Under the pieces are notes generated by a model. The model worked only from the letters and a program-made list of their open reading frames with translations, had not been told where the DNA came from and did no database searches. Positions 974 through 49,804 of a stretch of DNA of 64,000 nt are shown here, one piece after another. Within the stretch, counting starts at the first letter, position 1; each line of letters opens with the position of its first letter. The DNA lies in IMG/VR virus record IMGVR_UViG_3300011113_000640, positions 186,001 to 250,000 of that record; one strand, given 5' to 3'. The position numbers and the translations under genes are program-made.

Positions 974-979
974 TAAATA
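974..979 (+). promoter_or_regulatory. Late promoter TAAATA, 5 nt before the ATG
   Basis: TAAATA-GAACC-ATG(985), no SD. Confidence 0.55.
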
Positions 980-984
980 GAACC

Positions 985-2130
985 ATGCATACAGAAGAAC
1001 TCATAGCGTTAGGCAATCAAGCCCGAGAAGACAACAATCCAGAATTGGCCTTGCAGTACTATGTGCAGGCCTTGACTCAAGATCGCAATTCGGCAAGTGC
1101 ATTCAACAACTATGGCAATGTTTTGAGAGAGTGCGGTGATCCTGCGGGTGCCATACCTTTCTTGCAACGAAGCATAACTTTGGCTCCAGAGCATCCCACT
1201 GCGCAATTCAATTTGGCTGTGGCCTACTTGCTCATGGGCGACTACGAGCGCGGTTGGCCACAGTACGAAACACGCTGGAACTACGAACACCTGGCTGGCA
1301 CGTTGCCCAATTACACACAACCGCGTTGGACTGGACAAGATGTCCGAGACAAAACTGTGTTGATCATGGGCGAGCAAGGTCACGGTGACAACATACAGTT
1401 TGTGAGATTTGTTGAGGATATTAAAACCCGCGGCGCCCGAGTTATCTTGGCAGTCAGCGCCAGCCTCAAACCCTTGTTGCAGGGAGAGGCCATACCCGAC
1501 ATTGTTTGCCCGGGCGACGCCTTGCCAGAGTTTGATTATTGGATTCCCATAATGAGCATACCTGCTGTAGTGGGTAGCACCTTGGAAAATCTTGCTCCTG
1601 TGCAGTATTATCTCACAGCCGACACAGCATTACAACGTACCTGGCAACAACGCCTGGGACCAAAAACTCGCTTGCGTGTGGGCTTCTGTTGGTCGGGCCG
1701 CAGAGACACCTGGATCAATCGTCACAAAGGCATGCCTTTTGCAACCATGTTAGAACTGATAAAAAGAAATCCCACGTATGAATGGGTCAATCTGCAGTGC
1801 GATTGTACCCCTGAAGAAGAAGAAGCCCTGGTAGCTGCAGGAGTCACAGCTTATCCAGGTAGCATACAGAGCTTTGCAGATTCAGCGGCCTTGCTCATGC
1901 ACATGGATGTAGTCTTGAGTGTGGACACCGCTGTGGCGCACCTGGCCGGTGCATTGGGCAGACCTGTGTGGGTCATGCTGAGTCAATATGCTTTGGATTG
2001 GCGCTGGCTGTTGGATCGCGATTCAAGTCCTTGGTACACCACAGCCAGACTGTTCCGTCAACCTCAAATGGGTGATTGGAATTCTATCACTGACAAAATA
2101 CACAAATTTCTAAGCTGGTACAAGGTCTGA
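985..2130 (+). CDS. TPR-containing glycosyltransferase (GT9-like, GT-B fold)
   Basis: N-terminal TPRs (AFNNYGNVL, AQFNLAVAYLLMGDY). GT motifs EQGHGDNIQFVRF, VGFCWSG, DVVLSVDTAVAHLAGALG, DWRWLLDRDSSPWY. Confidence 0.85.
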   Translation: MHTEELIALGNQAREDNNPELALQYYVQALTQDRNSASAFNNYGNVLRECGDPAGAIPFLQRSITLAPEHPTAQFNLAVAYLLMGDYERGWPQYETRWNYEHLAGTLPNYTQPRWTGQDVRDKTVLIMGEQGHGDNIQFVRFVEDIKTRGARVILAVSASLKPLLQGEAIPDIVCPGDALPEFDYWIPIMSIPAVVGSTLENLAPVQYYLTADTALQRTWQQRLGPKTRLRVGFCWSGRRDTWINRHKGMPFATMLELIKRNPTYEWVNLQCDCTPEEEEALVAAGVTAYPGSIQSFADSAALLMHMDVVLSVDTAVAHLAGALGRPVWVMLSQYALDWRWLLDRDSSPWYTTARLFRQPQMGDWNSITDKIHKFLSWYKV

Positions 2131-2997
2131 AGGGCCGTAAACACTGTCAATAAACGTAGGATCAATTCCATACCGAATTAGAACTGACCTGGTTACATCT
2201 AAACATCCAGGGTCTTCGAGTTTTCTGCTGTGTTTCCAGATAATTCTGGTGGGTTCTTGATCAAATTGCTGTGCCTGTTCGTGCATGCCTGCCAGGGTCT
2301 GATGCGTCCATCCACCCGCCGACAACATAGGTGCATCTGGATGCGTGAGAAATTTTATAGGTTTTTCGGAGTCGCAACAGGTAAACGCAAAATAGCTGTC
2401 ATATTCGGTTCCCCCTCCTATGAACATGCTGGGCCAGAGTTGATAATCTCCAAATCTGTCAATCATGTAGGTCCAAAATTTCTTTAATTGATCAACATTC
2501 CAGATCCACGGAGGCATGTTTTGTACTCCGGGTATGCGACTCATGTCTTGATCCAGCAGTTGTGTGGAATTAGGGTACACATCAAGATGCCTGAGTCCAG
2601 GCAATCGGTAGGTGGTTCGATATCGGTCTCCGGTTTTGAATGTGGCCAGGTCAGCTGGTCTCAACAAAAAATCTTTGGCATCAAGCACTATCACATCTTC
2701 AAAGCGTGAATCAAGGCTGAACATGACCTTGTTTACTGCTTGTTCTTTGTAGCCATTGCGATCTTGCACACGACCATCAACAAATTCAAGTTGCCAGTCT
2801 GGCAACAAATCACAGGCCACAGATTTGGTTTGATCATAGAATACTTGCCAATCTTGATCAGTAGTATACGGGGTTATAGAATTGACCACAACGGTGAGAA
2901 AACGATGACCTTGCCAGTTTTTGTTCAGGCAATGGCAAAACATTTTAAACTGCAGAGAATCGTGATTGTAAGTGGCAACAAGTAATTTGTGCGTCAT
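2110..2997 (-). CDS. DUF6492-like putative glycosyltransferase (GT-A-like)
   Basis: The GYKEQAVNK...VIVLDAKDFLLRP pattern resembles DUF6492. TAAATA lies 4 nt before the ATG. Confidence 0.55.
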   Translation of the reverse strand: MTHKLLVATYNHDSLQFKMFCHCLNKNWQGHRFLTVVVNSITPYTTDQDWQVFYDQTKSVACDLLPDWQLEFVDGRVQDRNGYKEQAVNKVMFSLDSRFEDVIVLDAKDFLLRPADLATFKTGDRYRTTYRLPGLRHLDVYPNSTQLLDQDMSRIPGVQNMPPWIWNVDQLKKFWTYMIDRFGDYQLWPSMFIGGGTEYDSYFAFTCCDSEKPIKFLTHPDAPMLSAGGWTHQTLAGMHEQAQQFDQEPTRIIWKHSRKLEDPGCLDVTRSVLIRYGIDPTFIDSVYGPSDLVPA

Positions 2998-3001
2998 GCG
3001 T

Positions 3002-3007
3002 TATTTA
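3002..3007 (-). promoter_or_regulatory. Late promoter TAAATA, 4 nt before the ATG
   Basis: TAAATA-ACGC-ATG(2997). Confidence 0.55.
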
Positions 3008-3028
3008 AATGAACTATTGCAGGTCAAC

Positions 3029-3051
3029 AAAAAAGCGCCTTGCGGCGCTTT
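3029..3051 (-). terminator. Rho-independent terminator after the major capsid gene
   Basis: Minus strand reads AAAGCGCC-GCAA-GGCGCTTTTTT. Confidence 0.85.
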
Positions 3052-3095
3052 CTTGCTTCTTCCCATCCCTGAGAAAAATAAACTGTGTTCTCTGA

Positions 3096-4292: not shown

Positions 4293-4319
4293 TTAAGTCT
4301 CCTTTATTAATGTCTTGGA

Positions 4320-5417: not shown

Positions 5418-5428
5418 GCTTATTTCTC

Positions 5429-6067
5429 CTAGATTTTGAGACCACGTATCAAGCGCATTACTTCGCTTTTTACGTATCTCTGTGCTTTGCCGCTCTTGGC
5501 TGGGTCCTTGAACATTTCCAACAGTCTAGCTCCGCCGGCATGATTTAACAGGCCTTCGTAGATTGCTGTGGGATATGCATTGGGGGCGCTGGGCTGAGCG
5601 ACCACATCTACAGTGACAATTTCAAAGTCACTGACATGTCCGTTGGCGTCGTTGACGTTACCGCTGCCACGACTGCTAACACCTAATTTCACACCGCTTG
5701 TGAGCATGGTTTTGACCAACTCACCCATGGGTGTGGGTAGTATCTTTAATTTTCCATAACCTGCAGGACCATCCATCCACATTTTTTCAATCATGTGGCT
5801 CACACGATCCAGATTGATCTTCAGGTCTTCGGGGTGATCTACTTCGCCCAGAACTGAATGACCAGTGGTGATCTGTTCGTTGATGGTGTCCACTGCTTTG
5901 GCTATTTCGTTGACAGGATATACTCGTTCGTTGGCATTGCGAACTCCGCCCTCAATGCAAATGCCTTTGAGGTACAGATTCTTACCAGATCCATCCGCGG
6001 CTTCCTCAGACAAGATTTCTGCTCTTGCCTGAGTGAAGCTTAGATGTTCTCTTAGATAGCGAGCCAT
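5429..6067 (-). CDS. gp21: Prohead protease, gp21-like
   Basis: NANERVYP, LGEVDHP, LGVSSRGSG, VDVVAQPSAPNAY. Confidence 0.95.
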   Translation of the reverse strand: MARYLREHLSFTQARAEILSEEAADGSGKNLYLKGICIEGGVRNANERVYPVNEIAKAVDTINEQITTGHSVLGEVDHPEDLKINLDRVSHMIEKMWMDGPAGYGKLKILPTPMGELVKTMLTSGVKLGVSSRGSGNVNDANGHVSDFEIVTVDVVAQPSAPNAYPTAIYEGLLNHAGGARLLEMFKDPAKSGKAQRYVKSEVMRLIRGLKI

Positions 6068-6076
6068 ATCTAACTG

Positions 6077-6943
6077 TTAAGCCTTAGGAAATGGAGTTTT
6101 GGTGTTTACACCAGTGGCTTGTGCAAGGTGTGGCTTGGTAGCTGGTGTCATTTTCTTGTCACCGCCTACGCTGTTTTGCACTTTGCCAATCAACTCACCA
6201 GCTTTGGGAGCTGTGCGACCTTCGGCTGTGTCACCAGTCATTTTTACAGGACTAGCTACAGCACCTTTGGCGCCACTGTTGTTGGCATTGGTGCTCTTGG
6301 TGTTTGTGCCAGCTGGTTCAGATGTAACAGGAGCAGGAGCTTTGGCAAGATTAACTGCTTCCATCATGCCCATTTCAATTTCTTCTGAATCAGACTCTTC
6401 CTCTTCTTCGCCGTTGCCCATGTCAAAATCGGCTGTTTCTGTGTCGTCCATTTCTAAGTCGTCACCGCCCATTTCGTCACCAACTGCATCACCGCCTTCG
6501 TCGCCCATAAGGGACTCAAATTCGGCCATGAGTTCGTCTAATTTGTCTTCTAAGTCGACTACGCGATCTTCAAGATCTTCTTCGCCTTCGCCTTCTTGCA
6601 TTTCCATGCCTTGTTCTTCGGCTTCAACGTCGTTCATGAGTTCTTCATCGGCCATCATGGACTCGTCCATTTCTTCGTCTTCTTCCTCGTCCATGCGCTC
6701 TTTACGATCTTTTTTGTCGTCGTACTCGATGTCCTTGGTGACTTTCTCGCCGGCTTTTTCAGCTTTTTCGTCTTCTTTGTCAGTGGACTCGGCTTCGTCT
6801 AACTCTTCCTCTTCTTCTTCAGTCATGAGGTTTTCGTAGATTTCGCGGCTTTTTTCTACTACTATTTCGTGGAATAGTTCTTTGGCTTTCGCCTCTTCGT
6901 CGTTGATCACGTATTCGATCAACTGTTCAAATTTCGATGTCAT
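6077..6943 (-). CDS. Highly acidic prohead core/internal protein (gp67-like position)
   Basis: D/E-rich low-complexity protein in the head module, with an AAGGAG SD. Confidence 0.7.
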   Translation of the reverse strand: MTSKFEQLIEYVINDEEAKAKELFHEIVVEKSREIYENLMTEEEEEELDEAESTDKEDEKAEKAGEKVTKDIEYDDKKDRKERMDEEEDEEMDESMMADEELMNDVEAEEQGMEMQEGEGEEDLEDRVVDLEDKLDELMAEFESLMGDEGGDAVGDEMGGDDLEMDDTETADFDMGNGEEEEESDSEEIEMGMMEAVNLAKAPAPVTSEPAGTNTKSTNANNSGAKGAVASPVKMTGDTAEGRTAPKAGELIGKVQNSVGGDKKMTPATKPHLAQATGVNTKTPFPKA

Positions 6944-6976
6944 ATTATCTCCTTCGTAGGTTATGGCTCGTGATAA

Positions 6977-6982
6977 TATTTA
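6977..6982 (-). promoter_or_regulatory. Late promoter TAAATA for the head operon
   Basis: TAAATA ~35 nt upstream of ATG 6943. Confidence 0.55.
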
Positions 6983-7043
6983 CATATTATCTAAAATATT
7001 GGTACTTTTGAGGTGTAAAACTGGAGGTTTTATGACTGCAATA

Positions 7044-7265
7044 TTACAGTGCAGGTGCCGCCGGCGGAGGTGCGTACTGCTTCTTGATATCTTTGAGTTT
7101 TTCTTTGTATTCAAAACTTCTTACATCATTCATCTGACGCAGTTTGTTCAACTGTTTCAGAGTCAATCGTGTCTTGCGCAGATCACCCAGGCGTGGCTGG
7201 CTATTGTCCTGCGACACATCCTGATAGGCTTCGGGGCTACGCTCGTAGATTTCGTTGAGGATCAT
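7044..7265 (-). CDS. Small head-module protein (73 aa, MILNEIY...)
   Basis: Start moved to ATG 7265, which removes the overlap with the portal gene. TAAATA (7270-7275) lies 4 nt upstream. Confidence 0.7.
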   Translation of the reverse strand: MILNEIYERSPEAYQDVSQDNSQPRLGDLRKTRLTLKQLNKLRQMNDVRSFEYKEKLKDIKKQYAPPPAAPAL

Positions 7266-7275
7266 ACTGTATTTA

Positions 7276-9111
7276 TTAGAGTCCAGGCACGCCAGCTGGT
7301 GCCGGTGCTCCAGCTGTACCAGCGGTTCCGGGTGCAGTGGTAGGTGCTCCTGGTATGCCCTGCGGTGCGCCACCTTCGGCACCCAGTTCAGCACCAGCCA
7401 GTTCTTGGCCTGTGGCTATGTCGCTTTCTAGTCCGGCAGGTGTGATGCCTATGGCCCGCAGATCTTGTCCTTGCGTGGTGGCCAATTCAGGCTCGTCGCG
7501 CTCTTCCTTCCACATCTGTTCGTTTTCCATGATCTCTTCGTCGGACAGACCCAGGTAGCGTTTCATCATAAAACGCTTGCTGAGATACGGCAAAGGTTCC
7601 AAGCTGGTAAATGCCTGTATGCGGCTGGTGTCCAATTCGGCTTGACGATAACTGGCAAAATTCTGTGGTTCGCACAGCGCAATCGTGAACAAGCCAGCAT
7701 CAATGTTGAAACCTCTCCAGCGCAGGAACATCTTGAATTCGTCGTCCAGCTTCTGCATGATCAGGCCTTGCAGACGCTCGCAATACTGGTTGAAGCGATA
7801 TTCTTGTATAAGTGCGGTGCCTACTCGACCATCGTTCATGGCTCGATCTGAGTCGTCGGGACCTGTGGGCAGGTAGCTGCTTGGCACACGCAGACCACGT
7901 GCCATCTTGTTGTTGAAGTATTTTAAATCGTCGATTTCACCTAGATTGGCGCCACCGGGCAGGGTAGTGACGTCCGAACCTTTGCTGTCTGCGCTGACCG
8001 GAAAAAAGTAGTCTTCGTTGATACTAAGCGGGTTGTAGCTGGCATCCATCATGTTGGCACCACCACCGGTGTTGGTAGGGATCCTGCGTTGATGCATTTC
8101 GTTTTTGACCCGTTCCACAAACTGCATGGCCATGTGGCTGGGCATGTTGCCCACGTCAATCTTGAATATCCTACGTTCTGGAGCACGTTGCACACGGTAG
8201 ATCAACACTGAATCTTCCAGCAATTCTTTTTGCTTGAATACCTTGAATATGTTTTCCAAGATACTTTGTCCAAACGGCCAGAAAAAATCCAAGCCTTCGT
8301 TCAAGCTGAGATGCACCACATGCCTGGCATCAATACAGGTTTCGTTCATGGCCTGTGTGAATCTACTGTTGCCTGTTCCGCCACCTGCACCGCCATAGCC
8401 ACCACCATTGGGTGCTGTGTAGTTGTTTTGTCCGGCCACGCCTGTGGCACGGCTTACGTAGTAGTCTGACGTGGTCTTTTGTGCCACGCTCATGTTCTGG
8501 AAGTTAGGGTTGATGTCACGTATGATATACTGCTCAGGACGCTTGCCTTCGCTTTCGTTGACAATCACACGGGCCACTTTGACCATGTCTACCCACATCA
8601 TTTCAAAGGTCTCTGGGTCACGCACAAACACCTGATCGCCATACTTGATGGTGTTGCGGAACAGTTTAAATATGCGCTGATCCAGCTTGTTGAGCTTGGT
8701 CCACTGTTGCAACTGTTTTTTGATGATTTCTACTTCGTGGTCAGTGGGTTTGTCTGTAAACTGTATTTCAAACGGAGTCTTGTTGTCTTGATTGATCTGT
8801 GTTGAAAATTCTGCTATGATATCCAAACAGGCATTGACTTCACTATCGCAGTCCATGTTTTCATACTGATTGTAGCGTTCAATACGGTTGGGATGTCCGC
8901 TGTAAACTTCGGGCAAGCGTGACGCATAGTTGCGGAAAGCAAAATCGTTGGGTGTGCCTGTGCCGTCAGCATAGCCCACTCCGGTTTGTCTGGGATAATT
9001 TGGAAGTCCAAATTGGTTTTGTCCGCTGATTGGACTGAGTTGGCCGCCGGTGTTGGCGACCTTGAAATACTTTTTCCAGCCGCGTTTACGGTTATTGTCG
9101 TTGTCTGCCAT
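7276..9111 (-). CDS. gp20: Portal protein, gp20-like
   Basis: LLEDSVLIYRVQRAPERRIFKIDVGNMP, EDYFFP, TTLPGGANLGEIDDLKYF, LRVPSSYL. Confidence 0.96.
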   Translation of the reverse strand: MADNDNNRKRGWKKYFKVANTGGQLSPISGQNQFGLPNYPRQTGVGYADGTGTPNDFAFRNYASRLPEVYSGHPNRIERYNQYENMDCDSEVNACLDIIAEFSTQINQDNKTPFEIQFTDKPTDHEVEIIKKQLQQWTKLNKLDQRIFKLFRNTIKYGDQVFVRDPETFEMMWVDMVKVARVIVNESEGKRPEQYIIRDINPNFQNMSVAQKTTSDYYVSRATGVAGQNNYTAPNGGGYGGAGGGTGNSRFTQAMNETCIDARHVVHLSLNEGLDFFWPFGQSILENIFKVFKQKELLEDSVLIYRVQRAPERRIFKIDVGNMPSHMAMQFVERVKNEMHQRRIPTNTGGGANMMDASYNPLSINEDYFFPVSADSKGSDVTTLPGGANLGEIDDLKYFNNKMARGLRVPSSYLPTGPDDSDRAMNDGRVGTALIQEYRFNQYCERLQGLIMQKLDDEFKMFLRWRGFNIDAGLFTIALCEPQNFASYRQAELDTSRIQAFTSLEPLPYLSKRFMMKRYLGLSDEEIMENEQMWKEERDEPELATTQGQDLRAIGITPAGLESDIATGQELAGAELGAEGGAPQGIPGAPTTAPGTAGTAGAPAPAGVPGL

Positions 9112-9160
9112 GGTTGTATATTTAGCGGAGCCCAGCCTAGCTACAGCAGATTCTCAGTGC

Positions 9161-11257
9161 CTAAACTCCAGCATATTGCGAAGTTTTCTTTGTGTAATCG
9201 GCTATGTCTCGCATGACACGTGTCTGCGCATCCATTTGATCGCGCAGAACCGAAATGAGACCTTCCAGTTTCATGCCCATGTCGGCTCCGGGCAAGGCTG
9301 CCTGGGCGCCTGAGTTCAAGGGCACTATGGCTTCGGTGCCGTGCATGGTCAGATTGGGTTTGTATCCGCTCATGGGTCCGCTGAGTATGGCTCCGTTTGC
9401 AGCCGATACTTCGGCATGGAAATGCCCGGCAGTGGCTCTACTGCTAGGGAAGTTGTATTCGTCTTTGGCATAACTGGCACCAAGATTTTTCAGCTGAGCA
9501 ACAATGTTGCGCCCCTCTTCAGGTGACGGTTGGCGTCCTAGAGCAAAGTCCAAGGCCAGGCCTTTGTTGTGTTTGCTATCGCCAAGACCTTGATGATATT
9601 TGTCGTTGAATCCAGAAAAGTATGCAAATCCCGGCACTGCTTGTTGTATCATTCGGGCCAGACTCAACAAGTTGTTGCTGACGCCCGCACCTTCGGCCTG
9701 AACATCGCCGGTCTTGATTTTGAAACCCATTTTCTGCAGATCGCTTTGGCTCACAGCACCGGGTGCGGCTCCACCGCCCGGAGCTGAAGGGGTTGCTCCT
9801 GGAGCACCTGCACCGCCTGCAGGACCCTGGGCACCACCGCCTGATAGCCCTTTGCCAGTGAGTATACCTGTAACGCCTTGCACAACCTTGCCAAAACCTT
9901 CCATGATCGGTGTGGTGTGTTTGCCCACAGTGTCGCCTAGTTTCTGCAAGCTATCTCTGGAGCTCATCTGTGCTTGGCGCAGTGCTACCTGCGAAGCTGT
10001 ATTGGCATCGGTTCCTTTGGCATTGGCATCCACAGAAGCCACAGCATCTCGCAGACCTTTGGCATAGTCTTTGCCTTGCAGTATGTCGGCGTCTATAATT
10101 TTACCATATGTATCATGTGCAGCGCCTAATTGTCCCAAACTGGTCCTGAGCGGATCTGTTTCTGCGTAGGCAGCTTTTAGGCCTTCCATGAACTGCTCCA
10201 TGGTAATCTTTCCATCTCGAAGCGAATTACTCAATGTAACGCTGGCACCATTGGTGGCCAGGAACATTTCACTGGCTTCGTCGCTGGCGCCTACTAAACC
10301 GCTGGCAGTGTCGGCCATGCCCTTGGCCAACCTAGGGCTTATGGCGTTCAAGGCCAAGAAGCTGTCATACAAGCGTTTTTGAGCGTCTGGATCTAGGGTT
10401 TTGAGCGTAGCATAAAATATTTCAATCTGGTTGGCAGCTTCGCGTTGCTTTTCCAGTTCTTCGCGCTGTTGTCCTGTGAGCCGAGACAATATTTCCATTT
10501 CACGGATATAGGCCTTGGCCCCGGTGCTGATTTCAGCTTGTGTTTTGTTTTGTAATTGTCCCAGCTGACCTTGCATCTTGATATAGCCCATGATGCCTTT
10601 GTTGATGTCGTCCACGCTCATGCCCATGCGCATGAACTGGCCTTGTAAGTCGCTGTGCTGTATTTCGGTAGCCACATTGGCCACTTGTTGTATGCCTTGT
10701 GCCACAGTGGGTGCAAATCGACCTAGGTCGGCACTGTTTTCTCGAACCAAGCTGATCATCTTGTCCAGCTCTTCCAGGCCATAGCCAAACTTCTGCATGG
10801 TTGGGAACACTTCGCTCATGCCTTGTGCAGTGGCCATGCCCGAACGACTCAATTCTTGGTATGACTTGAACAATTGGTCCTGCTGTTTGGCTGCGGCATT
10901 TACTGCTTTGCCAAACAGGGCCAGTCCTCCAGCCACAGTGGCAAATATCCGTAGTGCCGGATTAATTATTGCAACCACGGCCAGGAGGCCGGCTATGGCA
11001 TCAGTTACTTGGCTGAGCTGTTCAGTAAAGACCTGAGCACCTTGCTTGCCTTCGTACATGGCCTTGCCAATGTCCACGGCACTTTTGGTAAGAATCTTGG
11101 TGAGATTGGTCTGTGCATCGGCATAGCCTTTGACGCCTTTGCTGGCGTCTTTCATGCGATCGGCCAGTTCCTTGGTTATAGGGCTGCCGGTTTTGAGAGC
11201 TTCGTTGTACTCGGCAAATATGCGCTGGATTTCTTCTGGGGTCATTTGTTCGGCCAT
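9161..11257 (-). CDS. Tape-measure-like tail protein with a C-terminal M15-type (LAS) zinc peptidase domain
   Basis: Long helical A/Q/G-rich body. SKHNKGLALDF and GHFHAE resemble zinc-ligand motifs; tail motif HGTEAIVPL. Start moved to MAEQMTPEE (11257). Confidence 0.75.
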   Translation of the reverse strand: MAEQMTPEEIQRIFAEYNEALKTGSPITKELADRMKDASKGVKGYADAQTNLTKILTKSAVDIGKAMYEGKQGAQVFTEQLSQVTDAIAGLLAVVAIINPALRIFATVAGGLALFGKAVNAAAKQQDQLFKSYQELSRSGMATAQGMSEVFPTMQKFGYGLEELDKMISLVRENSADLGRFAPTVAQGIQQVANVATEIQHSDLQGQFMRMGMSVDDINKGIMGYIKMQGQLGQLQNKTQAEISTGAKAYIREMEILSRLTGQQREELEKQREAANQIEIFYATLKTLDPDAQKRLYDSFLALNAISPRLAKGMADTASGLVGASDEASEMFLATNGASVTLSNSLRDGKITMEQFMEGLKAAYAETDPLRTSLGQLGAAHDTYGKIIDADILQGKDYAKGLRDAVASVDANAKGTDANTASQVALRQAQMSSRDSLQKLGDTVGKHTTPIMEGFGKVVQGVTGILTGKGLSGGGAQGPAGGAGAPGATPSAPGGGAAPGAVSQSDLQKMGFKIKTGDVQAEGAGVSNNLLSLARMIQQAVPGFAYFSGFNDKYHQGLGDSKHNKGLALDFALGRQPSPEEGRNIVAQLKNLGASYAKDEYNFPSSRATAGHFHAEVSAANGAILSGPMSGYKPNLTMHGTEAIVPLNSGAQAALPGADMGMKLEGLISVLRDQMDAQTRVMRDIADYTKKTSQYAGV

Positions 11258-11262
11258 AATTA

Positions 11263-11270
11263 TATTTATA
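11263..11270 (-). promoter_or_regulatory. Perfect T4 late promoter TATAAATA
   Basis: TATAAATA-TAATT-ATG(11257). Confidence 0.75.
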
Positions 11271-11282
11271 GAGGTAAAATCC

Positions 11283-12122: not shown

Positions 12123-12160
12123 TCTCTACCCCTGAGCAAATTGCCAAAATTGTAGATCAA

Positions 12161-13606: not shown

Positions 13607-13609
13607 TTG

Positions 13610-14446: not shown

Positions 14447-14464
14447 GGACTAATAGTTATCATT

Positions 14465-22221: not shown

Positions 22222-23124
22222 CTACTGTTCAGAGATGATTACGACCTCTCCGGCAACGTGAGCAGGATTCTTTCGACCAGCATTCTGGCGAGTCCACGAT
22301 GGATTGAGTCCGGCTTGTTCCAGCATGTCATCACGAATGTTTTGATTTTTCTTTTCTAGATTCAAGATTCTTGTAAAACTATTTGTGATGGCCGCTGTGT
22401 AATAGGCAAAAGGATTTTGACTTTTTGATTCATCAAATTGCAGGCCGATCTGGCTGAGTTGTAACAGCGCCTGGCCACGCATTTCTTCGTTGTAGGTATA
22501 GCCACGCCAGTTTGATCTAGTGGCATAGCGTTCGCATAATTTCATAAACATGGTGGCCAAGATACGGGTCATGGTGCCGTGATCCTTGCTGAACTCGCCG
22601 TGCTCGAGGTCACCCTTCCAGTGGCTCTTGCCCACCAGGTATGGCACCTTGTTTTCGTCCAAGCGATAGTGATAAAAAGGAGGAAAGTTCAAGCGCACAT
22701 GTTTTTCATCCAACACAGGTTGTTCCAACAATTCAGCAAGTGGATCGTCCTCATCCAACACGTCCAGTTCAAATATGTCTTCTATTTTCTTTTTCTTTTG
22801 CTGACTTTTTGGAATTTTTTTGGGTGCCATGGGTATGTGTTCCCAGCAGGTTATGCGGAACACCAGATCTGTGTTGGGGATTTTTTTAGGATCAACGTCT
22901 ACGCCAGTTTCGCGTCGTATACGATCTGCACGATTTCTCCTGGCTTCCGCCACGGTGCGCTGATTGATTTTAGCCACTGTGGGCAAAATTATGTCATACT
23001 GGTGATCTGTCGCAGGGTCACGATAGGTGCAGTAGGTATTTTTGCTTAGGTGTATCTGTTTTAAGATGTCTCTGTTGTTGAGATAGTTGGTTTTTGCTGG
23101 GGTTCTTGTGACAGTGTTTGGCAC
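22222..23124 (-). CDS. gp55: Late-transcription sigma factor, gp55-like (extended)
   Basis: NYLNNRDIL, NWRGYTYNEEM, FDESKSQNPFAYYT...NSF. GTG start with an AGGAG SD. Confidence 0.9.
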   Translation of the reverse strand: MPNTVTRTPAKTNYLNNRDILKQIHLSKNTYCTYRDPATDHQYDIILPTVAKINQRTVAEARRNRADRIRRETGVDVDPKKIPNTDLVFRITCWEHIPMAPKKIPKSQQKKKKIEDIFELDVLDEDDPLAELLEQPVLDEKHVRLNFPPFYHYRLDENKVPYLVGKSHWKGDLEHGEFSKDHGTMTRILATMFMKLCERYATRSNWRGYTYNEEMRGQALLQLSQIGLQFDESKSQNPFAYYTAAITNSFTRILNLEKKNQNIRDDMLEQAGLNPSWTRQNAGRKNPAHVAGEVVIISEQ

Positions 23125-23143
23125 TAAAATTCTCCTGAGATAT

Positions 23144-23180
23144 TATTTATTGTAGCACAAAAAGCCAGGTTGTCAACCTG
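23144..23180 (-). promoter_or_regulatory. sigma70 promoter of gp55 with an overlapping late motif and an operator-like palindrome
   Basis: TTGACA(23171-76)-16 nt-TACAAT(23149-54), with TG in the extended -10 position. ATAAATA at 23144-50. Palindrome CAGGTTGnCAACCTG at 23166-80. Confidence 0.7.
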
Positions 23181-23210
23181 AATCATAATATAGGTGGTTT
23201 ATTTTTACGG

Positions 23211-23216
23211 TAAATA
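23211..23216 (+). promoter_or_regulatory. Late promoter TAAATA for the baseplate operon
   Basis: TAAATA followed by an AGGA SD and ATG 23235. Confidence 0.6.
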
Positions 23217-23234
23217 CGGTATAGGAAAACAACA

Positions 23235-24476
23235 ATGGCCGACCAACCACCACTACCAGTAGATCCTGCTGTAGATCCTGATGTACCGCAAGGCACTGTG
23301 ACCATTACAGGAGCTTCCTCTATCTTTGACAATGCACTGCCTGTGGATCCTGCTGTAGATCCTGATGTCCCACAACCCAACAATCAAAATAATTTGCCTG
23401 TAGAACAAGAATTTGGCAACACCGATGGTTACGGTGCCCAGAATGAGATTGCGGTTTCTATCACAGATATAAACACTGAGCCTTCTATCATTGGCGACGA
23501 AGATGCGCAACAGCGAGCATTCCGAACAGGTGTTGCACCCGGCGACGAAGATGCGCAACAAAGGCCATTCCAAACATTTGCCGCACCCGGCGATGAAGAT
23601 GCGCAACAGGCAGCATTCAGGAGCAGTGAAGTACAGGTAGGCACCATACAGGCTCGGAATCAACAAACCAATGCCAGCCTGGCCCAGGCCACGTTTCCAC
23701 AAAACAACGACTGGCGTGTGACCCTGCGTCTAGCGCCCAATGCCAACTACCTGTACAAGGCCGGATACAGCAAAGACAATCCCAACGGTCCCGGTATCCT
23801 GGCACCCTTGGCCGTGACCAATGGTGTGGTGTTCCCCTACACTCCTGCCATCAGCACTGCCTACAAGGCTGACTACAGTAGCTATGATCTAATACACAGC
23901 AACTACCGTGGCTATTTTTACAAAAACAGTTATATGGATCAAATCACCATGAATGCAACCTTTACGGCCCAGAGCACATCTGATGCACAATATGTGTTGG
24001 CCGTGATACATTTTTTCCGCAGTGTGACCAAAATGTTTTATGGTCAGGATGCACAGAAAGGAAGCCCTCCTCCTTTGGTGTTCCTCAGCGGACTTGGAGA
24101 TTTTCAATACAACAATCATCCCTGCTTGGTCAGCCAGTTCAACTACAAGTTGCCGGCCGATGTTGACTACATCAGTTCAGGCACACCCAACAATCTTGGC
24201 CTGAACCTGGCTCCCTTGCAAAATCTTTTTTCCACTACCATAAATTCTTTTGGACCCACGGCTCAAAGATTGGCCCAGGCCTTTTTGCCACCAGGTGCGC
24301 AGAATGCCTTGCCAGCACCCCTGCAACAGTTGATCAATTCCAATCCCACATATGTTCCCAGCAAGATAGACATTGATCTGATCTTGTATCCGGTACAAAC
24401 ACGTCAGCAGGTCAGCACGCAGTTCAGTCTCAAAAACTTTGCTTCTGGACAACTACTTAGAGGAGGGTTCTGGTAA
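23235..24476 (+). CDS. Baseplate/tail-tube initiator-like protein (gp48/gp54-type)
   Basis: VVFPYTP, HSNY, FFRSVTKMFYG, GSPPPLVFLSG, LPADVDYI. Lies directly upstream of the gp53-like gene. Confidence 0.6.
   Translation: MADQPPLPVDPAVDPDVPQGTVTITGASSIFDNALPVDPAVDPDVPQPNNQNNLPVEQEFGNTDGYGAQNEIAVSITDINTEPSIIGDEDAQQRAFRTGVAPGDEDAQQRPFQTFAAPGDEDAQQAAFRSSEVQVGTIQARNQQTNASLAQATFPQNNDWRVTLRLAPNANYLYKAGYSKDNPNGPGILAPLAVTNGVVFPYTPAISTAYKADYSSYDLIHSNYRGYFYKNSYMDQITMNATFTAQSTSDAQYVLAVIHFFRSVTKMFYGQDAQKGSPPPLVFLSGLGDFQYNNHPCLVSQFNYKLPADVDYISSGTPNNLGLNLAPLQNLFSTTINSFGPTAQRLAQAFLPPGAQNALPAPLQQLINSNPTYVPSKIDIDLILYPVQTRQQVSTQFSLKNFASGQLLRGGFW
23250..23608 (+). repeat. Intragenic repeats: 2x LPVDPAVDPDVPQ and 3x GDEDAQQ (48-nt period)
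   Basis: Copies at ~23250 and ~23334. GGCGAYGAAGATGCGCAACA at 23493, 23541 and 23589. Confidence 0.85.
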
Positions 24477-31048: not shown

Positions 31049-31054
31049 TAAATA
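31049..31054 (+). promoter_or_regulatory. Late promoter TAAATA, 4 nt before the ATG
   Basis: TAAATA-CATC-ATG(31059). Confidence 0.6.
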
Positions 31055-31058
31055 CATC

Positions 31059-31433
31059 ATGCCCACTTTTATAGGATTCAATACCATCAATCAGAACAAA
31101 AAATTCACAGCCGTGGATTTTGATCTGATCAAGATAGATCTTCTCAATGCTTTCAACATACGTCAAGGTGAGTTGCCAGGAAGACCCGGCTATGGAACCA
31201 TAATCTGGACTTATCTGTTTGAAAATCAAACGCAGGAGACCCAGGCTGCCATAGTCAACGAAATCCAGCGTGTGGCTGGTGGAGATCCCCGAGTCTACAT
31301 CAGTGGCGTGCAGTTATTTCCACAGCAAAATGGCATCTTGATCCAGCTGGGTTTGGCTGTGGTACCCAGCACACAGGCACAACAGTTGAGCATATTTTTT
31401 GATCAACAACAACGTTCTGCCAGCTACGTTTAA
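31059..31433 (+). CDS. gp25: Baseplate wedge protein, gp25-like
   Basis: LIKIDLLNAFNIRQGELPGRPGYGTIIW, DPRV. Confidence 0.9.
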   Translation: MPTFIGFNTINQNKKFTAVDFDLIKIDLLNAFNIRQGELPGRPGYGTIIWTYLFENQTQETQAAIVNEIQRVAGGDPRVYISGVQLFPQQNGILIQLGLAVVPSTQAQQLSIFFDQQQRSASYV

Positions 31434-31454: not shown

Positions 31455-31460
31455 TAAATA
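31455..31460 (+). promoter_or_regulatory. Late promoter TAAATA
   Basis: Intergenic, upstream of the gp6-like gene. Confidence 0.55.
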
Positions 31461-31478
31461 TTAGAACAGGGAACATTC

Positions 31479-34400
31479 ATGGCCACAACGTCTAGACAAA
31501 CAGCGATTTTTGGTGTAGAAGATTGGAAGCAGATCTATCAAACCTATCAAGAAGCCAACTTTCAAAGCTATGATTTTGAAACACTGCGCAAGACTTTTGT
31601 GGATTATTTGCGCACCTACTATCCAGAAACATTCAACGACTACATTGAAAGTTCAGAATTCATTGCCTTGCTGGATGTCATGGCATTTATGGGCCAGGCC
31701 CTGGCTTTCCGCACAGATCTCAACACCAGAGAAAACTATTTAGACACTGCCGAGCGTCGCGACAGTGTGGTCAAGCTGGCCAACTTGGTAAGTTATAGTC
31801 CCAAGCGAAATACCGAAGCTTCGGGCTTGCTCAAGGTATTCAGCATTTCTACTACAGAAAACATCATAGACTTTACTGGAGCTAATCTGGCCAACATCAC
31901 GGTCAACTGGGCCGACCCTACAAATTTAAACTGGCAAGAACAGTTTACCACCATCTTGAATGCGGCCTTGGTCAACACACAAAAATTTGGTAACCCCGGT
32001 GCAAATCAAGTCATCCTGGGAGTTGACACACAAGAATATACCATAAACCTGGTTCCTGGATACTTGCCGGTCATACCCTATACCTCCACCATAGACACAG
32101 TCAACATGCCATTTGAAGTGGTCAGTAGCACCACCTTGGGCGAAAATTTCATCTACGAACCTCCGCCTTTACCTAATGGTCAGTTCAACATCCTGTTTAG
32201 GAATGATCAACAGGGATTTCTTAGTGCCAACACTGGTTTCTTTTTCTTGTTCAAACAAGGAGTACTACAGAATCAAGATTTCAACTTGCCAGAACGCATA
32301 ACCAATCGTGCTGTGGCCATCAACATTGAAGGGGTAAACAACACTGATGTATGGTTGTATCAACTTGACAACGTGGGCAACATTTCCAACTATTGGCAAA
32401 AGGTACAAAGTGTTTATGCGGCAGCAGTTGAACAGTTGGCACCCGGAACAAGAAATATCTACAGTGTGACCAGCCGTACCAATGATCAGATCACTCTTAA
32501 CTTTGGCGACGGTGTGTTTTCTACCATACCAGTAGGTACCTTCCGTACCTATGTGCGTGCCAGCAATGGTCTTACCTACATTATCAACCCGGTAGAGATG
32601 CAAAGCGTGGCCATACCCATCAGTTATGTCAGCCGCACAGGGCAGATCGAAACCATGACTCTTACCTGTGGATTGACCAATCCTGTGACCAACGCCCAGG
32701 CACGCGAGACCATAACCACCATCAAACAACGAGCACCTGCACAATATTACACACAGAACAGGATGGTCAACGGTGAAGACTATTCGCAGTTTCCATTCAC
32801 ACAATACAACAGTATTTTAAAAAGCACAGCCGTCAATCGTGCCAGCATTGGTACCAGCCGTTATCTCGATCTAGTGGACCCCACTGGAAAATATTCCAGC
32901 ACCGACATTTTTGCCAGCGATGGCGCACTATGGGAAAGCAATGATCTCTATAGCTTTCAATTTTCTTGGTTGACTACCAACGATATTTCAGATGCTGTAA
33001 TCAACCAGATCTCGCCCTTGGCGTTGCGTGCAGGGCTACAACAATTTTACTATGCCAATTATGTCAGACCCAATTTAGCAGTGCTGAATTTTACTTGGAA
33101 TCAAAGCACAGTGCTGACCAATGAGACCACGGGCTATTTTCAAAACGCAGCCGGCAATCCTGTGCCCATTGGTATCTTTACCAGCAACAATGCCAAATAC
33201 ATAACAGAACGAAGCCTGGTACAATTTGCTGCACCCACTGGCTTTTACTTCGACGCAAACAATCACCTGGTGGTAGGAGTCCCCACACGTGCCGATGACA
33301 AGCTGACCATATGGGCCAGCCCCACCGCGGTGTACGAAGCCGGCAATGCCCAGGGCTATGGCAATCTTCCGTCTGGAGTGGGTCCTGTGGTACTCAACAA
33401 TTACGTGCCCACAGGTGCTATACCTGTGCAGGTCATTCCGGTTTTTATCACTGACATTCCTGTGTCTGTGCAACAAAGCATAGTATCACAGATAGCATTG
33501 AATCAGAATTTTGGACTGGGATATAATAATCTCACAGCTACCTGGTATGTGATCACTTCCAATAATCTAGCAACAAATGCTGCATTTAGCTTGGCCAATG
33601 CCCAAAGCACAACTGGAACCAACCAGGATGCCAGTTGGTTGGTACAGGCCACCTACAATGGAACAAGCTACACCGTGGTATCCAGGAGTCTAGATTATTT
33701 CTTTGGCAGTGTATTACAGACAAGATTTTTCTTTTATACCAGCGATCCCATCTACGACAGCAGGACCGGCACTGTGATCAGTGACTATGTGAACATACTT
33801 AAAATCAACACACAACCAGATTTGGCTGAGCCATTGGGATCTGACACAGTGTTGAACATAATAGATCAACCTGTGCTCAGTGATGGACTGGTGGACGATT
33901 TCCAGGTTGTGGTCAGTTTTGCCCAGGCACCCGACAATCTCACTCCAGTGAATCCAGACTTCTTTACTGATATAGTGGCACCCACAGTGGATGCCAATTC
34001 TAAATTGGTTTTCTTTGAAGCCACAGTGGATTTTGACAACCTACAGCGTTTCCTGTTGCTGGAACCTGGTGTGGTCAACAGTGATTATGCCACAAAAACC
34101 GCCATACAAGCTGTACAGACTCAATATGTCACAGGACAAGTTTTCTATGCCTATAGCGAGGGAAATTTCTATGTGTTGAGTCTAGACAGTCTAGGTGATC
34201 CTACCTTGCTTTCAAGCACAAATTATTTGGCAAAAACAGGCAGACAAGACTTGTATTTCCAATACAGACACAATAGTCCGTTGACCAGTAGAATCGATCC
34301 AGGCAGTACCAACATCATCGATGCCTATGTGGTCACCAATGCTTACTATACTGCTTATATCAATTGGTTGCAAGATACCACAGGCACAGTTGTTGAACCT

Positions 34401-49648: not shown

Positions 49649-49660
49649 GGTAAATACTTC

Positions 49661-49804
49661 ATGACGCAAAATAACAAACCAACTGATCACACAACCAAAC
49701 CCAGCAACAAGCGGCCCAACGAAACTGGCACCGTTAGAGTTGAAGGATTTGTGAGAATTTTTGATCCAAAAACCCAACAAGTATTTGTGGAGAAACGAGC
49801 ATGA
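49661..49804 (+). CDS. Small 47-aa protein (MTQNNKP...VEGFVRIFDPKTQQVFVEKRA)
   Basis: Translated by hand. TAAATA (49651-56) lies 4 nt upstream and there is an ATGA overlap with the next gene. Similar to the N-terminus of the next protein. Confidence 0.7.
   Translation: MTQNNKPTDHTTKPSNKRPNETGTVRVEGFVRIFDPKTQQVFVEKRA

What the first reader, a model, noticed from the sequence alone, without database searches (positions are those of the whole stretch)
974..49663. Systematic TAAATA-N4-5-ATG architecture suggests leaderless late mRNAs
Seen: six genes have TAAATA 4-5 nt before the ATG and no SD (ATG at 985+, 2997-, 7265-, 11257-, 31059+, 49661+); the portal has a 7-nt gap (9111-). Other late genes (839, 6943, 23235, 50466) have TAAATA further upstream plus a normal SD. 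Known: T4 gp55 initiates a few nt downstream of TATAAATA. Inference: there are two classes of late transcript, leaderless or near-leaderless versus SD-led, which may tune stoichiometry or evade SD-dependent shut-off.
Basis: partly seen in the sequence, partly recalled or inferred. Interest (0 to 1): 0.6.

Follow-up and report, generated by a model that had tools for sequence, protein, structure and literature searches.

The report
Leaderless late promoters in jumbo phage
In this giant freshwater phage and its relatives, about half of the T4-style late promoters sit so close to the start codon that the mRNA should begin at, or within three bases of, the AUG. These genes would then be translated without a ribosome-binding site, which is not described for T4-type phages and is inferred here from sequence alone.

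Summary
The window lies in a 320.5-kb freshwater jumbo phage of the T4-related RaK2/PA5oct/Atu_ph07 supergroup.

- **Late sigma factor.** It encodes a gp55-type late sigma factor at window 22222-23124(-).
- **Motif position.** TAAATA is not over-represented overall. However, 36 of 159 copies lie 4-9 nt before the ATG of a long ORF that has no SD. Another ~25 lie 17-24 nt upstream with an SD in between, and almost none fall between these two distances.
- **Rank among hexamers.** Only SD hexamers are as enriched at the short distance.
- **Start codons.** The short-gap class uses ATG only.
- **Start-site signature.** The base before the ATG is a pyrimidine. In SD-led genes, A is enriched 5-7 nt after the motif. 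This fits the T4 rule, where TATAAATA occupies -13..-6.
- **Conservation.** Orthologues in two sister genomes keep the class and the exact gap. Among 78 portal orthologues, 44 have gap 7 without SD and 29 have gap 17-27 (28 of them with an SD), with at least 4-6 switches on the tree.
- **Other phages.** T4, PA5oct, Atu_ph07, RaK2 and two cyanophages lack the short class. Pelagiphage HTVC008M has it.

No transcription start was mapped, so leaderless initiation is inferred.

The parts
974..987 (+). TAAATA, 5 nt, ATG. Short-gap (leaderless-type) promoter and start of a 381-aa TPR/glycosyltransferase-like gene, at a divergent junction.
   Evidence: Orthologues in G001 and G002 keep gap 5.
2995..3007 (-). 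TAAATA, 4 nt, ATG of a 295-aa gene of unknown function. It lies about 25 nt after the terminator hairpin that closes the major capsid operon.
3032..3051 (.). GC-rich hairpin with T runs: intrinsic terminator after the major capsid gene (3096-4292, -).
   Evidence: Metatranscriptome contigs cover 3077-6828 and nothing at 2001-3000.
6941..6982 (-). SD-led promoter of the head operon (288-aa protein, prohead protease, 365-aa protein, major capsid). TAAATA is at 6982-6977, then a 33-nt leader region with AAGGAG, then ATG 6943.
   Evidence: In relatives the conserved leader ACGAGCC... begins 5 or 6 nt after the motif.
7263..7275 (-). TAAATA, 4 nt, ATG of a 73-aa head protein gene (7044-7265). It matches the position and size of PA5oct structural protein gp150.
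   Evidence: In 79 relatives the gap is 5 (41), 4 (26), 7 (11), and once 18 with SD.
9109..9124 (-). TAAATA, 7 nt (TACAACC), ATG of the portal gene (7276-9111).
11255..11270 (-). TATAAATA, 5 nt, ATG of a 698-aa gene (9161-11257). It matches the position of PA5oct structural protein gp148.
   Evidence: In relatives the gap is 5 in 28, 6 in 4, and 26-27 in 4.
22222..23124 (-). gp55-type late sigma factor gene (300 aa, GTG start).
   Evidence: phrog_12791 E 3e-73. T4 gp55 is 31-33% identical over the sigma region-2 part, and N13, R57, F86, Y97 and T99 are kept. It is syntenic with gp46/gp47 homologues.
23122..23149 (-). TAAATA, 19 nt with AGGAG, then the GTG of the gp55-like gene. The motif overlaps a sigma-70-like TTGACA-N16-TACAAT promoter.
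23211..23237 (+). SD-led promoter: TAAATA, 18 nt with AGGA, ATG of a 413-aa virion protein gene (first gene of the baseplate module).
31049..31061 (+). TAAATA, 4 nt, ATG of the gp25-like baseplate wedge gene (31059-31433), inside a 14-nt intergenic gap.
   Evidence: Gap 4 is kept in G001 and G002.
31455..31481 (+). SD-led promoter: TAAATA, 18 nt, ATG of the 1134-aa gp6-like baseplate wedge gene.
49651..49663 (+). TAAATA, 4 nt, ATG of a conserved 47-aa ORF (49661-49804). Its TGA stop overlaps the ATG of the next gene (49801), forming ATGA.
50441..50468 (+). SD-led promoter: TAAATA, 19 nt, ATG of a 467-aa virion protein gene.
932..937 (-). TAAATA 92 nt upstream of ATG 839, which has an AAGGAG SD. 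It is a possible promoter with a long leader; the assignment is uncertain.

Best explanation
TAAATA (preferably ATAAATA) is the core of this phage's T4-type late promoter. It is a -10-like box with no -35 element, read by host RNA polymerase carrying the phage's gp55-like sigma factor.

As in T4, transcription should begin 5-6 nt after the box. The clade places the box in two ways:
1. **SD-led.** The box lies 17-27 nt before the start codon. This gives a 12-22 nt leader with an SD, a shorter version of the T4 arrangement.
2. **Short-gap.** The box lies 4-5 nt before an ATG, so the A of the AUG is the first transcribed base. Alternatively it lies 7-8 nt before, with an A at the predicted start, giving a 3-nt leader. 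There is no SD.

Short-gap mRNAs would be translated by the leaderless route, in which a 70S ribosome and fMet-tRNA bind a 5'-terminal AUG. About half of the promoters in the genome are of this type.

The two forms interconvert easily in evolution by gain or loss of a ~15-20 nt SD-bearing leader.

Shown here: motif, positions, statistics, conservation, the sigma factor gene. Inferred: the start site, the timing, and the mode of translation.
For: **1. Promoter identity.**
- A gp55 homologue is encoded in the window.
- The motif equals positions -11..-6 of the T4 box. A is enriched at '-12': 12/20 and 14/33 at gene-proximal sites, against 17/90 at other copies.
- No upstream (-35) conservation is seen.
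- The motif sits before the portal, gp25-like, gp6-like, head operon, adaptor and tail genes.
- About 60 of the 159 copies lie before gene starts, although the total is no higher than Markov models expect (159 against 155-184). This implies fewer copies elsewhere than expected. T4 also has fewer copies in total than expected.

**2. Two classes.** Histograms are bimodal in three genomes (G000, G001, G002), with an empty zone at 10-16 nt.

**3. Start-site signature.**
- In the 93 long-gap (14-30 nt) sites pooled over the three genomes, A is 52-57% and G 4-5% at +5 to +7.
- The conserved leader of the head operon begins with A at +5 or +6 in relatives.
- The same analysis in T4 recovers the known +6 start, with purine in 18/23 (positions from PMC7892883).
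- The base before the ATG is a pyrimidine in 20/23 (gap 4) and 27/33 (gap 5). Gap 7 has A at +5 in 19/21.

**4. Leaderless hallmarks.**
- No SD is present.
- Start codons are ATG in 91 cases. The 5 non-ATG cases look like chance intragenic hits. SD-led genes use non-ATG starts in 8 of 68 (Fisher p = 9e-4).
- AUG preference is documented for leaderless mRNAs (PMC8459731).

**5. Context.**
- 10 of 33 short-gap genes sit at divergent junctions, some with only 18-41 nt between the two genes.
- One palindromic TAAATATTTA serves two genes whose ATGs are 19 nt apart.
- Gene 2997 starts about 35 nt after a terminator.

**6. Conservation.**
- 19/23 (G001) and 17/21 (G002) orthologues keep the short-gap class, most with the same gap, while the flanks diverge.
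- Portal: 44 orthologues have gap 7 and none of them has an SD. 29 have gap 17-27, of which 28 have an SD (Fisher 2e-19). There are at least 6 changes on the tree, at least 4 on well-supported branches.
- In SD-led relatives the ATG is at the same codon, so the start codons are correctly placed.
Against: - No 5' end was mapped. Metatranscriptome contigs cover only the capsid operon (3077-6828) and cannot show starts.
- The box lacks T4's conserved T at -13, and the sigma factor has H95 replaced by F. The start distance could therefore differ by a base or two. If it were 7-8 nt, gap-4 and gap-5 transcripts would lose the AUG.
- A 3-nt leader is reported to lower leaderless translation several-fold in Caulobacter (PMC8459731), yet gap 7 is common here.
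- TAAATA sits exactly where an SD would sit, so an RNA-level role cannot be formally excluded.
- Folding energy of the first 24-36 nt does not differ between the classes.
- gp33 and gp45 homologues were not found.
- Late timing is not measured.
Confidence: 0.7

Rival explanations
1. In the short-gap class TAAATA works in the RNA, not the DNA. It would be an SD substitute or A/U-rich translational enhancer (for example an S1-binding site) on transcripts that start further upstream. Its resemblance to the late promoter would be coincidental.
For: TAAATA lies at 4-9 nt, the same distance as SD hexamers, and is the only non-SD hexamer as enriched there. Many short-gap genes lie inside same-strand gene arrays, where read-through transcripts are likely (13 of 33 have under 40 nt to the upstream gene).
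Against: - The identical hexamer forms a second class at 17-27 nt with a normal SD between it and the ATG. Nothing occurs at 10-16 nt.
- It is invariant over about 80 relatives, while real SDs vary.
- A gp55 homologue and the T4-box register fit a DNA signal.
- Divergent gene pairs and a palindromic site fit a DNA signal.
- Exclusive ATG use and a pyrimidine before the ATG are start-site and leaderless features, not enhancer features.
- In Deinococcus an analogous -10 box next to ORFs could not be replaced by an RBS (PMC12340547).
Confidence: 0.1
2. TAAATA marks an RNA processing site. A phage or host endoribonuclease would cut polycistronic late RNA there and release leaderless or short-leader mRNAs.
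For: Many sites lie between tightly packed same-strand genes. Nucleases that generate leaderless mRNAs are known (MazF, PMC5001579, listed).
Against: This does not explain sites at divergent junctions or just after a terminator. It also does not explain the match to the gp55 box or the apparent scarcity of the motif away from gene starts. No candidate nuclease was identified.
Confidence: 0.05
3. The motif is a promoter but is read by the host primary sigma factor as a -10-only promoter. The genes would then not be a 'late' class and gp55 would be irrelevant. Leaderless output could still hold.
For: - TAAATA is AT-rich and -10-like.
- Leaderless genes in Deinococcus-Thermus use a -10 box alone, 6-7 nt before the ORF.
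- gp33 and gp45 were not found.
- Short-gap genes include enzymes as well as virion proteins.
Against: - In either register TAAATA lacks a key sigma-70 base: T at -7, or A at -11.
- There is no TG extension or -35 element.
- It equals the T4 and relatives' late box. PA5oct and Atu_ph07 have (TA)TAAATA before the same structural genes.
- The gp55 gene itself has a canonical TTGACA-N16-TACAAT promoter of a different kind.
- Early sigma-70 promoters described for PA5oct are TTGAC/TATAATA (PMC7318152).
Confidence: 0.1
4. Artefact: the start codons are misassigned or the pattern arises by chance.
For: Gene calls here were made with a simple home-made ORF picker.
Against: - The histogram does not depend on gene calls, and the p values are about 1e-24.
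- Relatives with an SD-led version use the same ATG codon.
- Gaps are conserved across orthologues of 60-90% identity.
- The short-gap pattern is enriched over its reversed control in further relatives G003-G010.
Confidence: 0.03

Closest known systems
Bacteriophage T4 late promoters (TATAAATA read by gp55, with gp33 and the gp45 clamp)
   Same: - A gp55-family sigma factor is encoded next to gp46/gp47 homologues.
- The box is AT-rich and -10-like, with no -35 element.
- It lies before virion genes.
- The inferred start is 5-6 nt after the box.
- The motif appears scarce away from gene starts.
   Different: - Only the 6-nt core TAAATA is invariant.
- T4's boxes lie 13-32 nt (mode 28) before the ATG, always with an SD and never closer than 13 nt.
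- Here about half lie 4-9 nt before the ATG with no SD.
- The sigma factor is 300 aa against 185 aa in T4.
- gp33 and gp45 were not detectable.
Thermus phages phiYS40 and Lalka27a (most transcripts leaderless)
   Same: [quoted passage not shown]
   Different: - Those phages infect Deinococcus-Thermus hosts, where leaderless mRNAs are the norm.
- Their promoters are host-sigma-type or have a distinct TAGGGT late element.
- They are not T4/gp55-type.
- Here the host is probably a betaproteobacterium (beta-type tmRNA), and SD-led and leaderless forms coexist under one motif.
'-10 region adjacent to ORFs' in Deinococcus-Thermus (PMC12340547)
   Same: A -10 box about 6-7 nt before the ORF sits where an RBS would be. 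It acts as a promoter without a -35 element and yields leaderless mRNA.
   Different: That is a cellular genome and a primary sigma factor (RpoD). Here it is a phage late sigma factor, with a gap of 4-5 nt measured from a box whose last base is at -6.
Pelagibacter phage HTVC008M (T4-like pelagimyophage)
   Same: 12 of 186 TAAATA copies lie exactly 5 nt before the ATG of long ORFs (consensus TAAATAGTAnnATG). It also encodes bS21.
   Different: - It is a different lineage: 147 kb, 33% GC, and a SAR11 host.
- It has a single gap value and no clear SD-led TAAATA class.
- Late-promoter prediction was reported as unsuccessful in pelagimyophages (PMC7029224), so the pattern appears undescribed.
Jumbo relatives PA5oct, Atu_ph07 and RaK2
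   Same: The portal is 49-52% identical to those of PA5oct, Atu_ph07 and Phosso (RaK2 was not listed in that search). In PA5oct and Atu_ph07 the head module is syntenic and (TA)TAAATA boxes lie before the same structural genes.
   Different: Their boxes are followed by leaders with an SD. The pattern TAAATA-N4-7-ATG is not above its reversed control (PA5oct 39 vs 58, Atu_ph07 36 vs 56; for N4-5, RaK2 5 vs 37).

Membership tests
T4-type (gp55-dependent) late promoter system | The phage encodes a gp55-family sigma factor. | tested here: met
   Window 22222-23124(-): phrog_12791 'sigma factor for late transcription' E 3e-73 and phrog_234 E 7e-24. T4 gp55 E 6.5e-7. DNA-pocket residues N13, R57, F86, Y97 and T99 are kept; H95 is F.
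T4-type (gp55-dependent) late promoter system | A -10-like TATAAATA box, no conserved -35 element, upstream of late (virion) genes. | tested here: met
   The core TAAATA is invariant and A is enriched at the '-12' position. T at -13 is not conserved, and there is no upstream conservation. The box precedes portal, baseplate, head-operon, adaptor and tail genes. This is a 6-of-8 variant of the T4 box.
T4-type (gp55-dependent) late promoter system | Co-activator gp33 and sliding clamp gp45. | tested here: inconclusive
   T4 gp45, Pfam DNA_PPF, Syn9 gp33 and an iterative gp45 search all found nothing in G000. PA5oct was covered only by the iterative search, which also found nothing. These proteins diverge fast, so absence is not shown.
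T4-type (gp55-dependent) late promoter system | Transcription starts about 6 nt after the box, late in infection. | not testable with these tools
   Only composition signatures are available: A enrichment at +5 to +7, and a conserved leader starting at +5 or +6. The method was checked on T4. There are no time-course or 5'-end data.
Leaderless mRNAs | The transcript 5' end is at, or within a few nt of, the start codon. | not testable with these tools
   This is inferred from promoter-to-ATG spacing. RNA contigs give no ends.
Leaderless mRNAs | No Shine-Dalgarno sequence before the start codon. | tested here: met
   Short-gap genes have no SD. Among portal orthologues, 44 of 44 gap-7 genes lack an SD, while 28 of 29 long-gap genes have one.
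Leaderless mRNAs | Strong preference for AUG as the start codon. | tested here: met
   91 ATG, and 5 non-ATG that look like chance hits. SD-led genes have 60 ATG and 8 GTG/TTG (p = 9e-4). The criterion comes from PMC8459731.
Leaderless mRNAs | Little secondary structure at the 5' end compared with other mRNAs. | tested here: inconclusive
   The mean MFE of the first 24-36 nt is low in all classes and does not differ between them.

The most novel reading that the evidence does not exclude
The leaderless late mRNAs may be one half of a phage-run translation switch. The same genome encodes:
- IF1;
- a tRNA with the initiator-type acceptor stem (C1 x A72 mismatch);
- ribosomal protein bS21, whose gene sits behind a TAAATA box and an 8-codon leaderless-type mini-ORF. 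The stop codon of this mini-ORF overlaps the bS21 start, and the arrangement is conserved in three genomes.

Late in infection the phage could re-tool host ribosomes and initiation factors to favour 70S/leaderless initiation on its own messages. IF1 and extra fMet-tRNA are reported to stimulate leaderless translation (PMC9031893). The same logic might apply to the bS21-carrying pelagimyophages.
Probability: 0.15. Interest if true: 0.85.

Novelty: new variant of a known kind. Interest (0 to 1): 0.62.

Why it matters
T4 late transcription is a textbook system, and its promoters are thought of as a box followed by a ~20-nt leader with an SD. This work shows an abundant, uncultured freshwater clade of T4-related jumbo phages, and apparently the SAR11 pelagimyophage HTVC008M as well, in which the same type of box is routinely placed against the start codon.

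If start-site mapping confirms it, several things follow:
- The known range of leaderless gene expression would extend to phages of Proteobacteria.
- It would explain why late-promoter searches failed in pelagimyophages.
- Gene and start-codon calling in such genomes would improve: TAAATA-N4-5-ATG marks a start.
- It would give a concrete, testable reason why these phages carry translation genes (IF1, bS21, an initiator-like tRNA).

The repeated switching of one gene between the two architectures is a natural experiment on how interchangeable SD-led and leaderless initiation are.

Tried and rejected
- **Megablast of 5 kb against cultured phages:** no match. There is no close cultured relative, so no published transcriptome applies.
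- **RNA evidence.** Three freshwater metatranscriptome runs hold only contigs. These cover the capsid operon (3077-6828) and nothing at the short-gap genes in 2001-3000 or 7001-7800. No starts, ends or strand can be read. This is consistent with operon limits set by the promoter at ~6972-6982 and the terminator at 3032-3051, but no more than that.
- **5' folding energy of short-gap versus SD-led genes:** no difference.
- **gp45 and gp33 searches:** by T4 protein, Pfam DNA_PPF, Syn9 gp33 and jackhmmer seeded with T4 plus HTVC008M. Nothing was found.
- **IF3:** none.
- **Host inference from IF1:** best bacterial matches are at most 62% identical and come from many phyla, so this is uninformative. 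The tmRNA type was more useful.
- **bS21 as a marker of the leaderless class:** rejected as a simple rule, because PA5oct has a bS21-like hit but no short-gap class.
- **Stoichiometry tuning:** not supported. The portal switches class repeatedly, and both classes contain low-copy baseplate proteins.
- **TAAATA doubling as the upstream gene's stop codon:** true for only 3 of 33 short-gap and 5 of 20 SD-led sites, so it is not the reason for the motif.
- **PA5oct paper:** it reports only sigma-70-like promoters and does not mention leaderless mRNAs.
Full report
**What the window is.** The 64-kb window is positions 186,001-250,000 of a 320,541-bp IMG/VR virus record (46% GC, CheckV completeness 93%). 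Its portal is 49-52% identical to those of Sinorhizobium phage Phosso, Agrobacterium phage Atu_ph07 and Pseudomonas phage PA5oct. The head module is syntenic with theirs: a ~700-aa structural protein, the portal, a 73-aa protein, a ~280-aa protein, the prohead protease, and further along the major capsid protein. There is no near-identical cultured phage. DNA runs that hold the sequence are lake, freshwater and viral metagenomes. A full-length beta-type permuted tmRNA elsewhere in the genome points to a betaproteobacterial host.

**The sigma factor.** Window 22222-23124(-) encodes a 300-aa gp55-family late sigma factor (phrog_12791, E 3e-73; T4 gp55 31-33% identical over the sigma region-2 part). 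It lies next to gp46 and gp47 homologues, as in T4. Of the T4 residues that form the pockets for the flipped bases at -12, -9 and -8 (PMC7892883), N13, R57, F86, Y97 and T99 are kept, and H95 is F.

**Checking the observation.** TAAATA is not over-represented as a word. The window has 27 copies against 25 expected, and the genome has 159 against 155-184 expected. Its position is highly non-random.
- Counting, for each copy, the distance to an ATG that opens an ORF of at least 60 codons gives 9, 11, 3, 8, 2 and 3 cases at gaps 4-9. Gaps 11-13 have none, and a second hump of about 25 lies at 17-24.
- Permuted hexamers give flat profiles.
- Across all 4096 hexamers, only the SD words AAGGAG, AGGAGA and AAAGGA are as enriched 4-9 nt before such ATGs as TAAATA. 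TAAATA scores 36/159 against a background of 2.4% (p = 1e-24). It alone is also enriched at 17-24 nt (25/159, p = 4e-11).
- The short-gap genes have no SD. The long-gap genes have AGGA or AAGGAG at normal spacing.

**Where transcription should start.** In T4 the box TATAAATA occupies -13 to -6, so the start is the sixth base after it.
- As a check on the method, the composition downstream of 23 gene-proximal T4 boxes shows purine at +6 in 18/23, preceded by T.
- In the 93 long-gap (14-30 nt) sites pooled over three genomes of this clade, A rises to 52-57% and G falls to 4-5% at +5, +6 and +7.
- In relatives, the conserved leader of the head operon (ACGAGCC...) begins 5 or 6 nt after the box. 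The only length variation lies in the 4-5 nt between.
- A is enriched immediately 5' of TAAATA, at the T4 '-12' position (12/20 and 14/33 against 17/90 at other copies). This supports the T4 register.

With a start at +5 or +6, gap-4 and gap-5 genes (56 cases in three genomes) have the A of the AUG as the first transcribed base. The base before the ATG is a pyrimidine in 20/23 and 27/33, the usual -1 preference. Gap 7 (21 cases) has A at +5 in 19/21, then C, then a pyrimidine. Gap 8 has A at +6 in 6/8. Both predict a 3-nt leader. Gap 6 is under-used. Flexible start-site choice could alternatively put the start on the ATG in all of them. I cannot tell which.

**Leaderless hallmarks and context.**
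- *Start codons.* The short-gap class uses ATG in 91 cases. The five GTG/TTG cases lie deep inside open frames or just after a gap-4 ATG. SD-led TAAATA genes use GTG or TTG in 8 of 68 (p = 9e-4). AUG dependence is a known property of leaderless initiation (PMC8459731).
- *Divergent junctions.* Ten of 33 short-gap genes sit at head-to-head junctions, several with only 18-41 nt between the two genes. At G000:134272-134281 one palindromic TAAATATTTA faces both ways, between ATGs 19 nt apart. This is conserved in G001.
- *After a terminator.* Gene 2997(-) begins about 35 nt after the terminator hairpin that follows the capsid gene.
- *Not a stop codon.* The TAA of the motif is the upstream gene's stop in only 3 of 33 cases.

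**Comparative evidence.** IMG/VR holds at least 598 portal relatives, and the best 80 (76-94% identical) were examined.
- *Portal.* Upstream of the portal, TAAATA is invariant while the flanks diverge. 44 orthologues have gap 7 and none of them has an SD. 29 have gap 17-27, of which 28 have an SD. Five have an SD and no box within 60 nt (Fisher 2e-19). SD-led and short-gap versions use the same ATG codon, which validates the start assignment. On a portal tree the state changes at least 6 times, at least 4 on well-supported branches.
- *73-aa gene.* The gene downstream of the portal is short-gap in 78 of 79 relatives, with gaps 5, 4 or 7 and never 6.
- *698-aa gene.* The gene upstream is gap 5-6 in 32 relatives and gap 26-27 in 4.
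- *Sister genomes.* Two near-complete sister genomes (G001, 337 kb with terminal repeats; G002, 317 kb) show the same bimodal histogram. 19/23 and 17/21 orthologues of short-gap genes keep the class, most with the same gap, at 60-90% protein identity. A few genes switch class in either direction.
- *More distant members.* Five further members (G006-G010) are also enriched over the reversed-pattern control.

**How general it is.**
- *T4.* It has 32 TATAAATA copies, with gaps of 13-32 (mode 28) and none shorter.
- *Other cultured phages.* PA5oct, Atu_ph07, RaK2, an Erwinia jumbo phage, Phosso and cyanophages Syn9 and S-PM2 show no excess of the short-gap pattern over its control. PA5oct and Atu_ph07 do carry (TA)TAAATA before the same structural genes, followed by SD-bearing leaders.
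- *HTVC008M.* Unexpectedly, Pelagibacter phage HTVC008M shows a sharp peak: 12 of 186 TAAATA copies lie exactly 5 nt before ATGs of ORFs of up to 687 codons, with consensus TAAATAGTAnnATG.

A study of pelagimyophages states that late-promoter prediction failed in them and that bS21 is core to the group (PMC7029224). I found no paper in the searchable library that describes leaderless mRNAs from gp55-type promoters. Leaderless transcripts as the rule are documented for Thermus phages phiYS40 and Lalka27a and for Deinococcus-Thermus genomes, where a -10 box lies 6-7 nt before the ORF. phiKZ has none among its early transcripts.

**Which genes are involved.**
- *Short-gap genes:* the portal, a gp25-like wedge protein, a small head protein, four PHROG 'virion structural' proteins and an Ig-like-domain protein. 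The class also includes two metallophosphoesterases, two glycosyltransferase-like proteins and a heptose-activating enzyme homologue.
- *SD-led genes:* the head operon (protease and capsid), a gp6-like wedge protein, a head-tail adaptor and a tail protein. The gp55 gene is also listed here, but its TAAATA overlaps a sigma-70-type TTGACA-N16-TACAAT promoter and may be incidental.

**RNA data.** Three freshwater metatranscriptome runs hold contigs at 90-99% identity that cover 3077-6828. This is the interval between the predicted head-operon start (~6972) and the terminator (3032-3051). They hold nothing at 2001-3000 or 7001-7800, although a DNA run covers everything. This fits the predicted operon but says nothing about 5' ends. 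Contigs from relatives also map best on conserved genes.

**Translation genes in the same genome (outside the window).**
- *bS21* (G000:89418-89639, -; Pfam 59 bits). It lies behind a TAAATA box. Five nt after the box an ATG opens an 8-codon ORF whose TGA overlaps the bS21 start. The same layout, with a different sequence, occurs in G001 and G002.
- *IF1* (G000:34496-34690 region; 69.7 bits), with a TTG start and a strong SD.
- *An initiator-like tRNA* with a CAT anticodon and the initiator-type acceptor stem, including the C1 x A72 mismatch, but without the three G-C pairs of the anticodon stem.
- *No IF3*.

A review lists IF1 and extra fMet-tRNA as stimulators of leaderless translation (PMC9031893). 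This is a lead, not evidence. PA5oct also has a bS21-like gene without the short-gap class.

**Verdict.** The best reading is a gp55-type late promoter core used in two interchangeable layouts, one of which should yield leaderless or 3-nt-leader mRNAs. The promoter assignment is well supported. The start site, the timing and the translation mode are inferred. It is a new variant of a known kind. Its value rests on start-site mapping, for which HTVC008M offers a cultured test system.

Noticed in passing
G000:89418-89673 (-), outside the window (L165): A ribosomal protein bS21 gene (73 aa, GTG start) lies behind a TAAATA box. An 8-codon ORF starts 5 nt after the box, and its TGA overlaps the bS21 start (GTGA). 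G001 has the same layout. G002 has it with a different sequence and an ATGA overlap.
   Followed up: partly
G000:34490-34708 (-), outside the window (L166:1498-1713): A phage-encoded translation initiation factor IF1 (72 aa, TTG start, GAGGAG SD, no TAAATA). It is conserved in G001 and G002 and was not found in PA5oct or T4. Its best bacterial matches are at most 62% identical and come from mixed phyla.
   Followed up: partly
G000:270341-279075 (L162:341-9075): A cluster of seven tRNAs plus a full-length beta-proteobacterial-type permuted tmRNA (tag ANAANDEVFALAA). One tRNA-CAT (L162:5959-6032) has the initiator-type acceptor stem with a C1 x A72 mismatch but lacks the three G-C pairs of the anticodon stem.
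   Followed up: partly
Pelagibacter phage HTVC008M, NC_020484 (L173-L180): There is a sharp excess of TAAATA exactly 5 nt before ATGs of long ORFs (12 sites, consensus TAAATAGTAnnATG). This suggests leaderless late mRNAs in pelagimyophages, where published late-promoter prediction failed.
   Followed up: partly
G000:134272-134281, outside the window: A palindromic TAAATATTTA lies between two divergent genes whose ATGs are 19 nt apart (gaps 7 and 9). One element would serve both directions. It is conserved in G001.
   Followed up: partly
window 34883-49648 (+): A single 4921-aa ORF (phrog_10938 'virion structural protein', E 6e-282) follows the gp6-like wedge gene in the baseplate module. It is followed by the conserved 47-aa leaderless-type ORF, which is coupled (ATGA overlap) to the next gene.
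   Followed up: partly
window 14465-16335, 19246-20313 (-) and 56352-62799 (+): There are at least seven radical-SAM-domain paralogues, four of them in tandem at the right end of the window. Two are inserted between the gp46 and gp47 homologues. Their function is unknown.
   Followed up: no
window 23122-23190 (-): The gp55-like gene has a canonical sigma-70-type promoter (TTGACA-N16-TACAAT) that overlaps the TAAATA box (TACAATAAATA). It is conserved in G001 and G002. This could allow early expression plus late auto-activation.
   Followed up: partly
loci L032, L040 and 23 others, upstream of the orthologue of window gene 6943: In 25 relatives TAAATA is absent within 60 nt upstream of this gene's ATG. 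In the two whose sequence was inspected (L032, L040), TAAGTA stands in its place. TAAGTA is also mildly enriched before gene starts in G000, so it may be a tolerated promoter variant.
   Followed up: no
whole genomes G000-G002, HTVC008M, T4, PA5oct: TAAATA is at or below Markov expectation in every genome (for example T4 225 against 314-392), even though many copies are promoters. This suggests selection against stray late promoters.
   Followed up: partly
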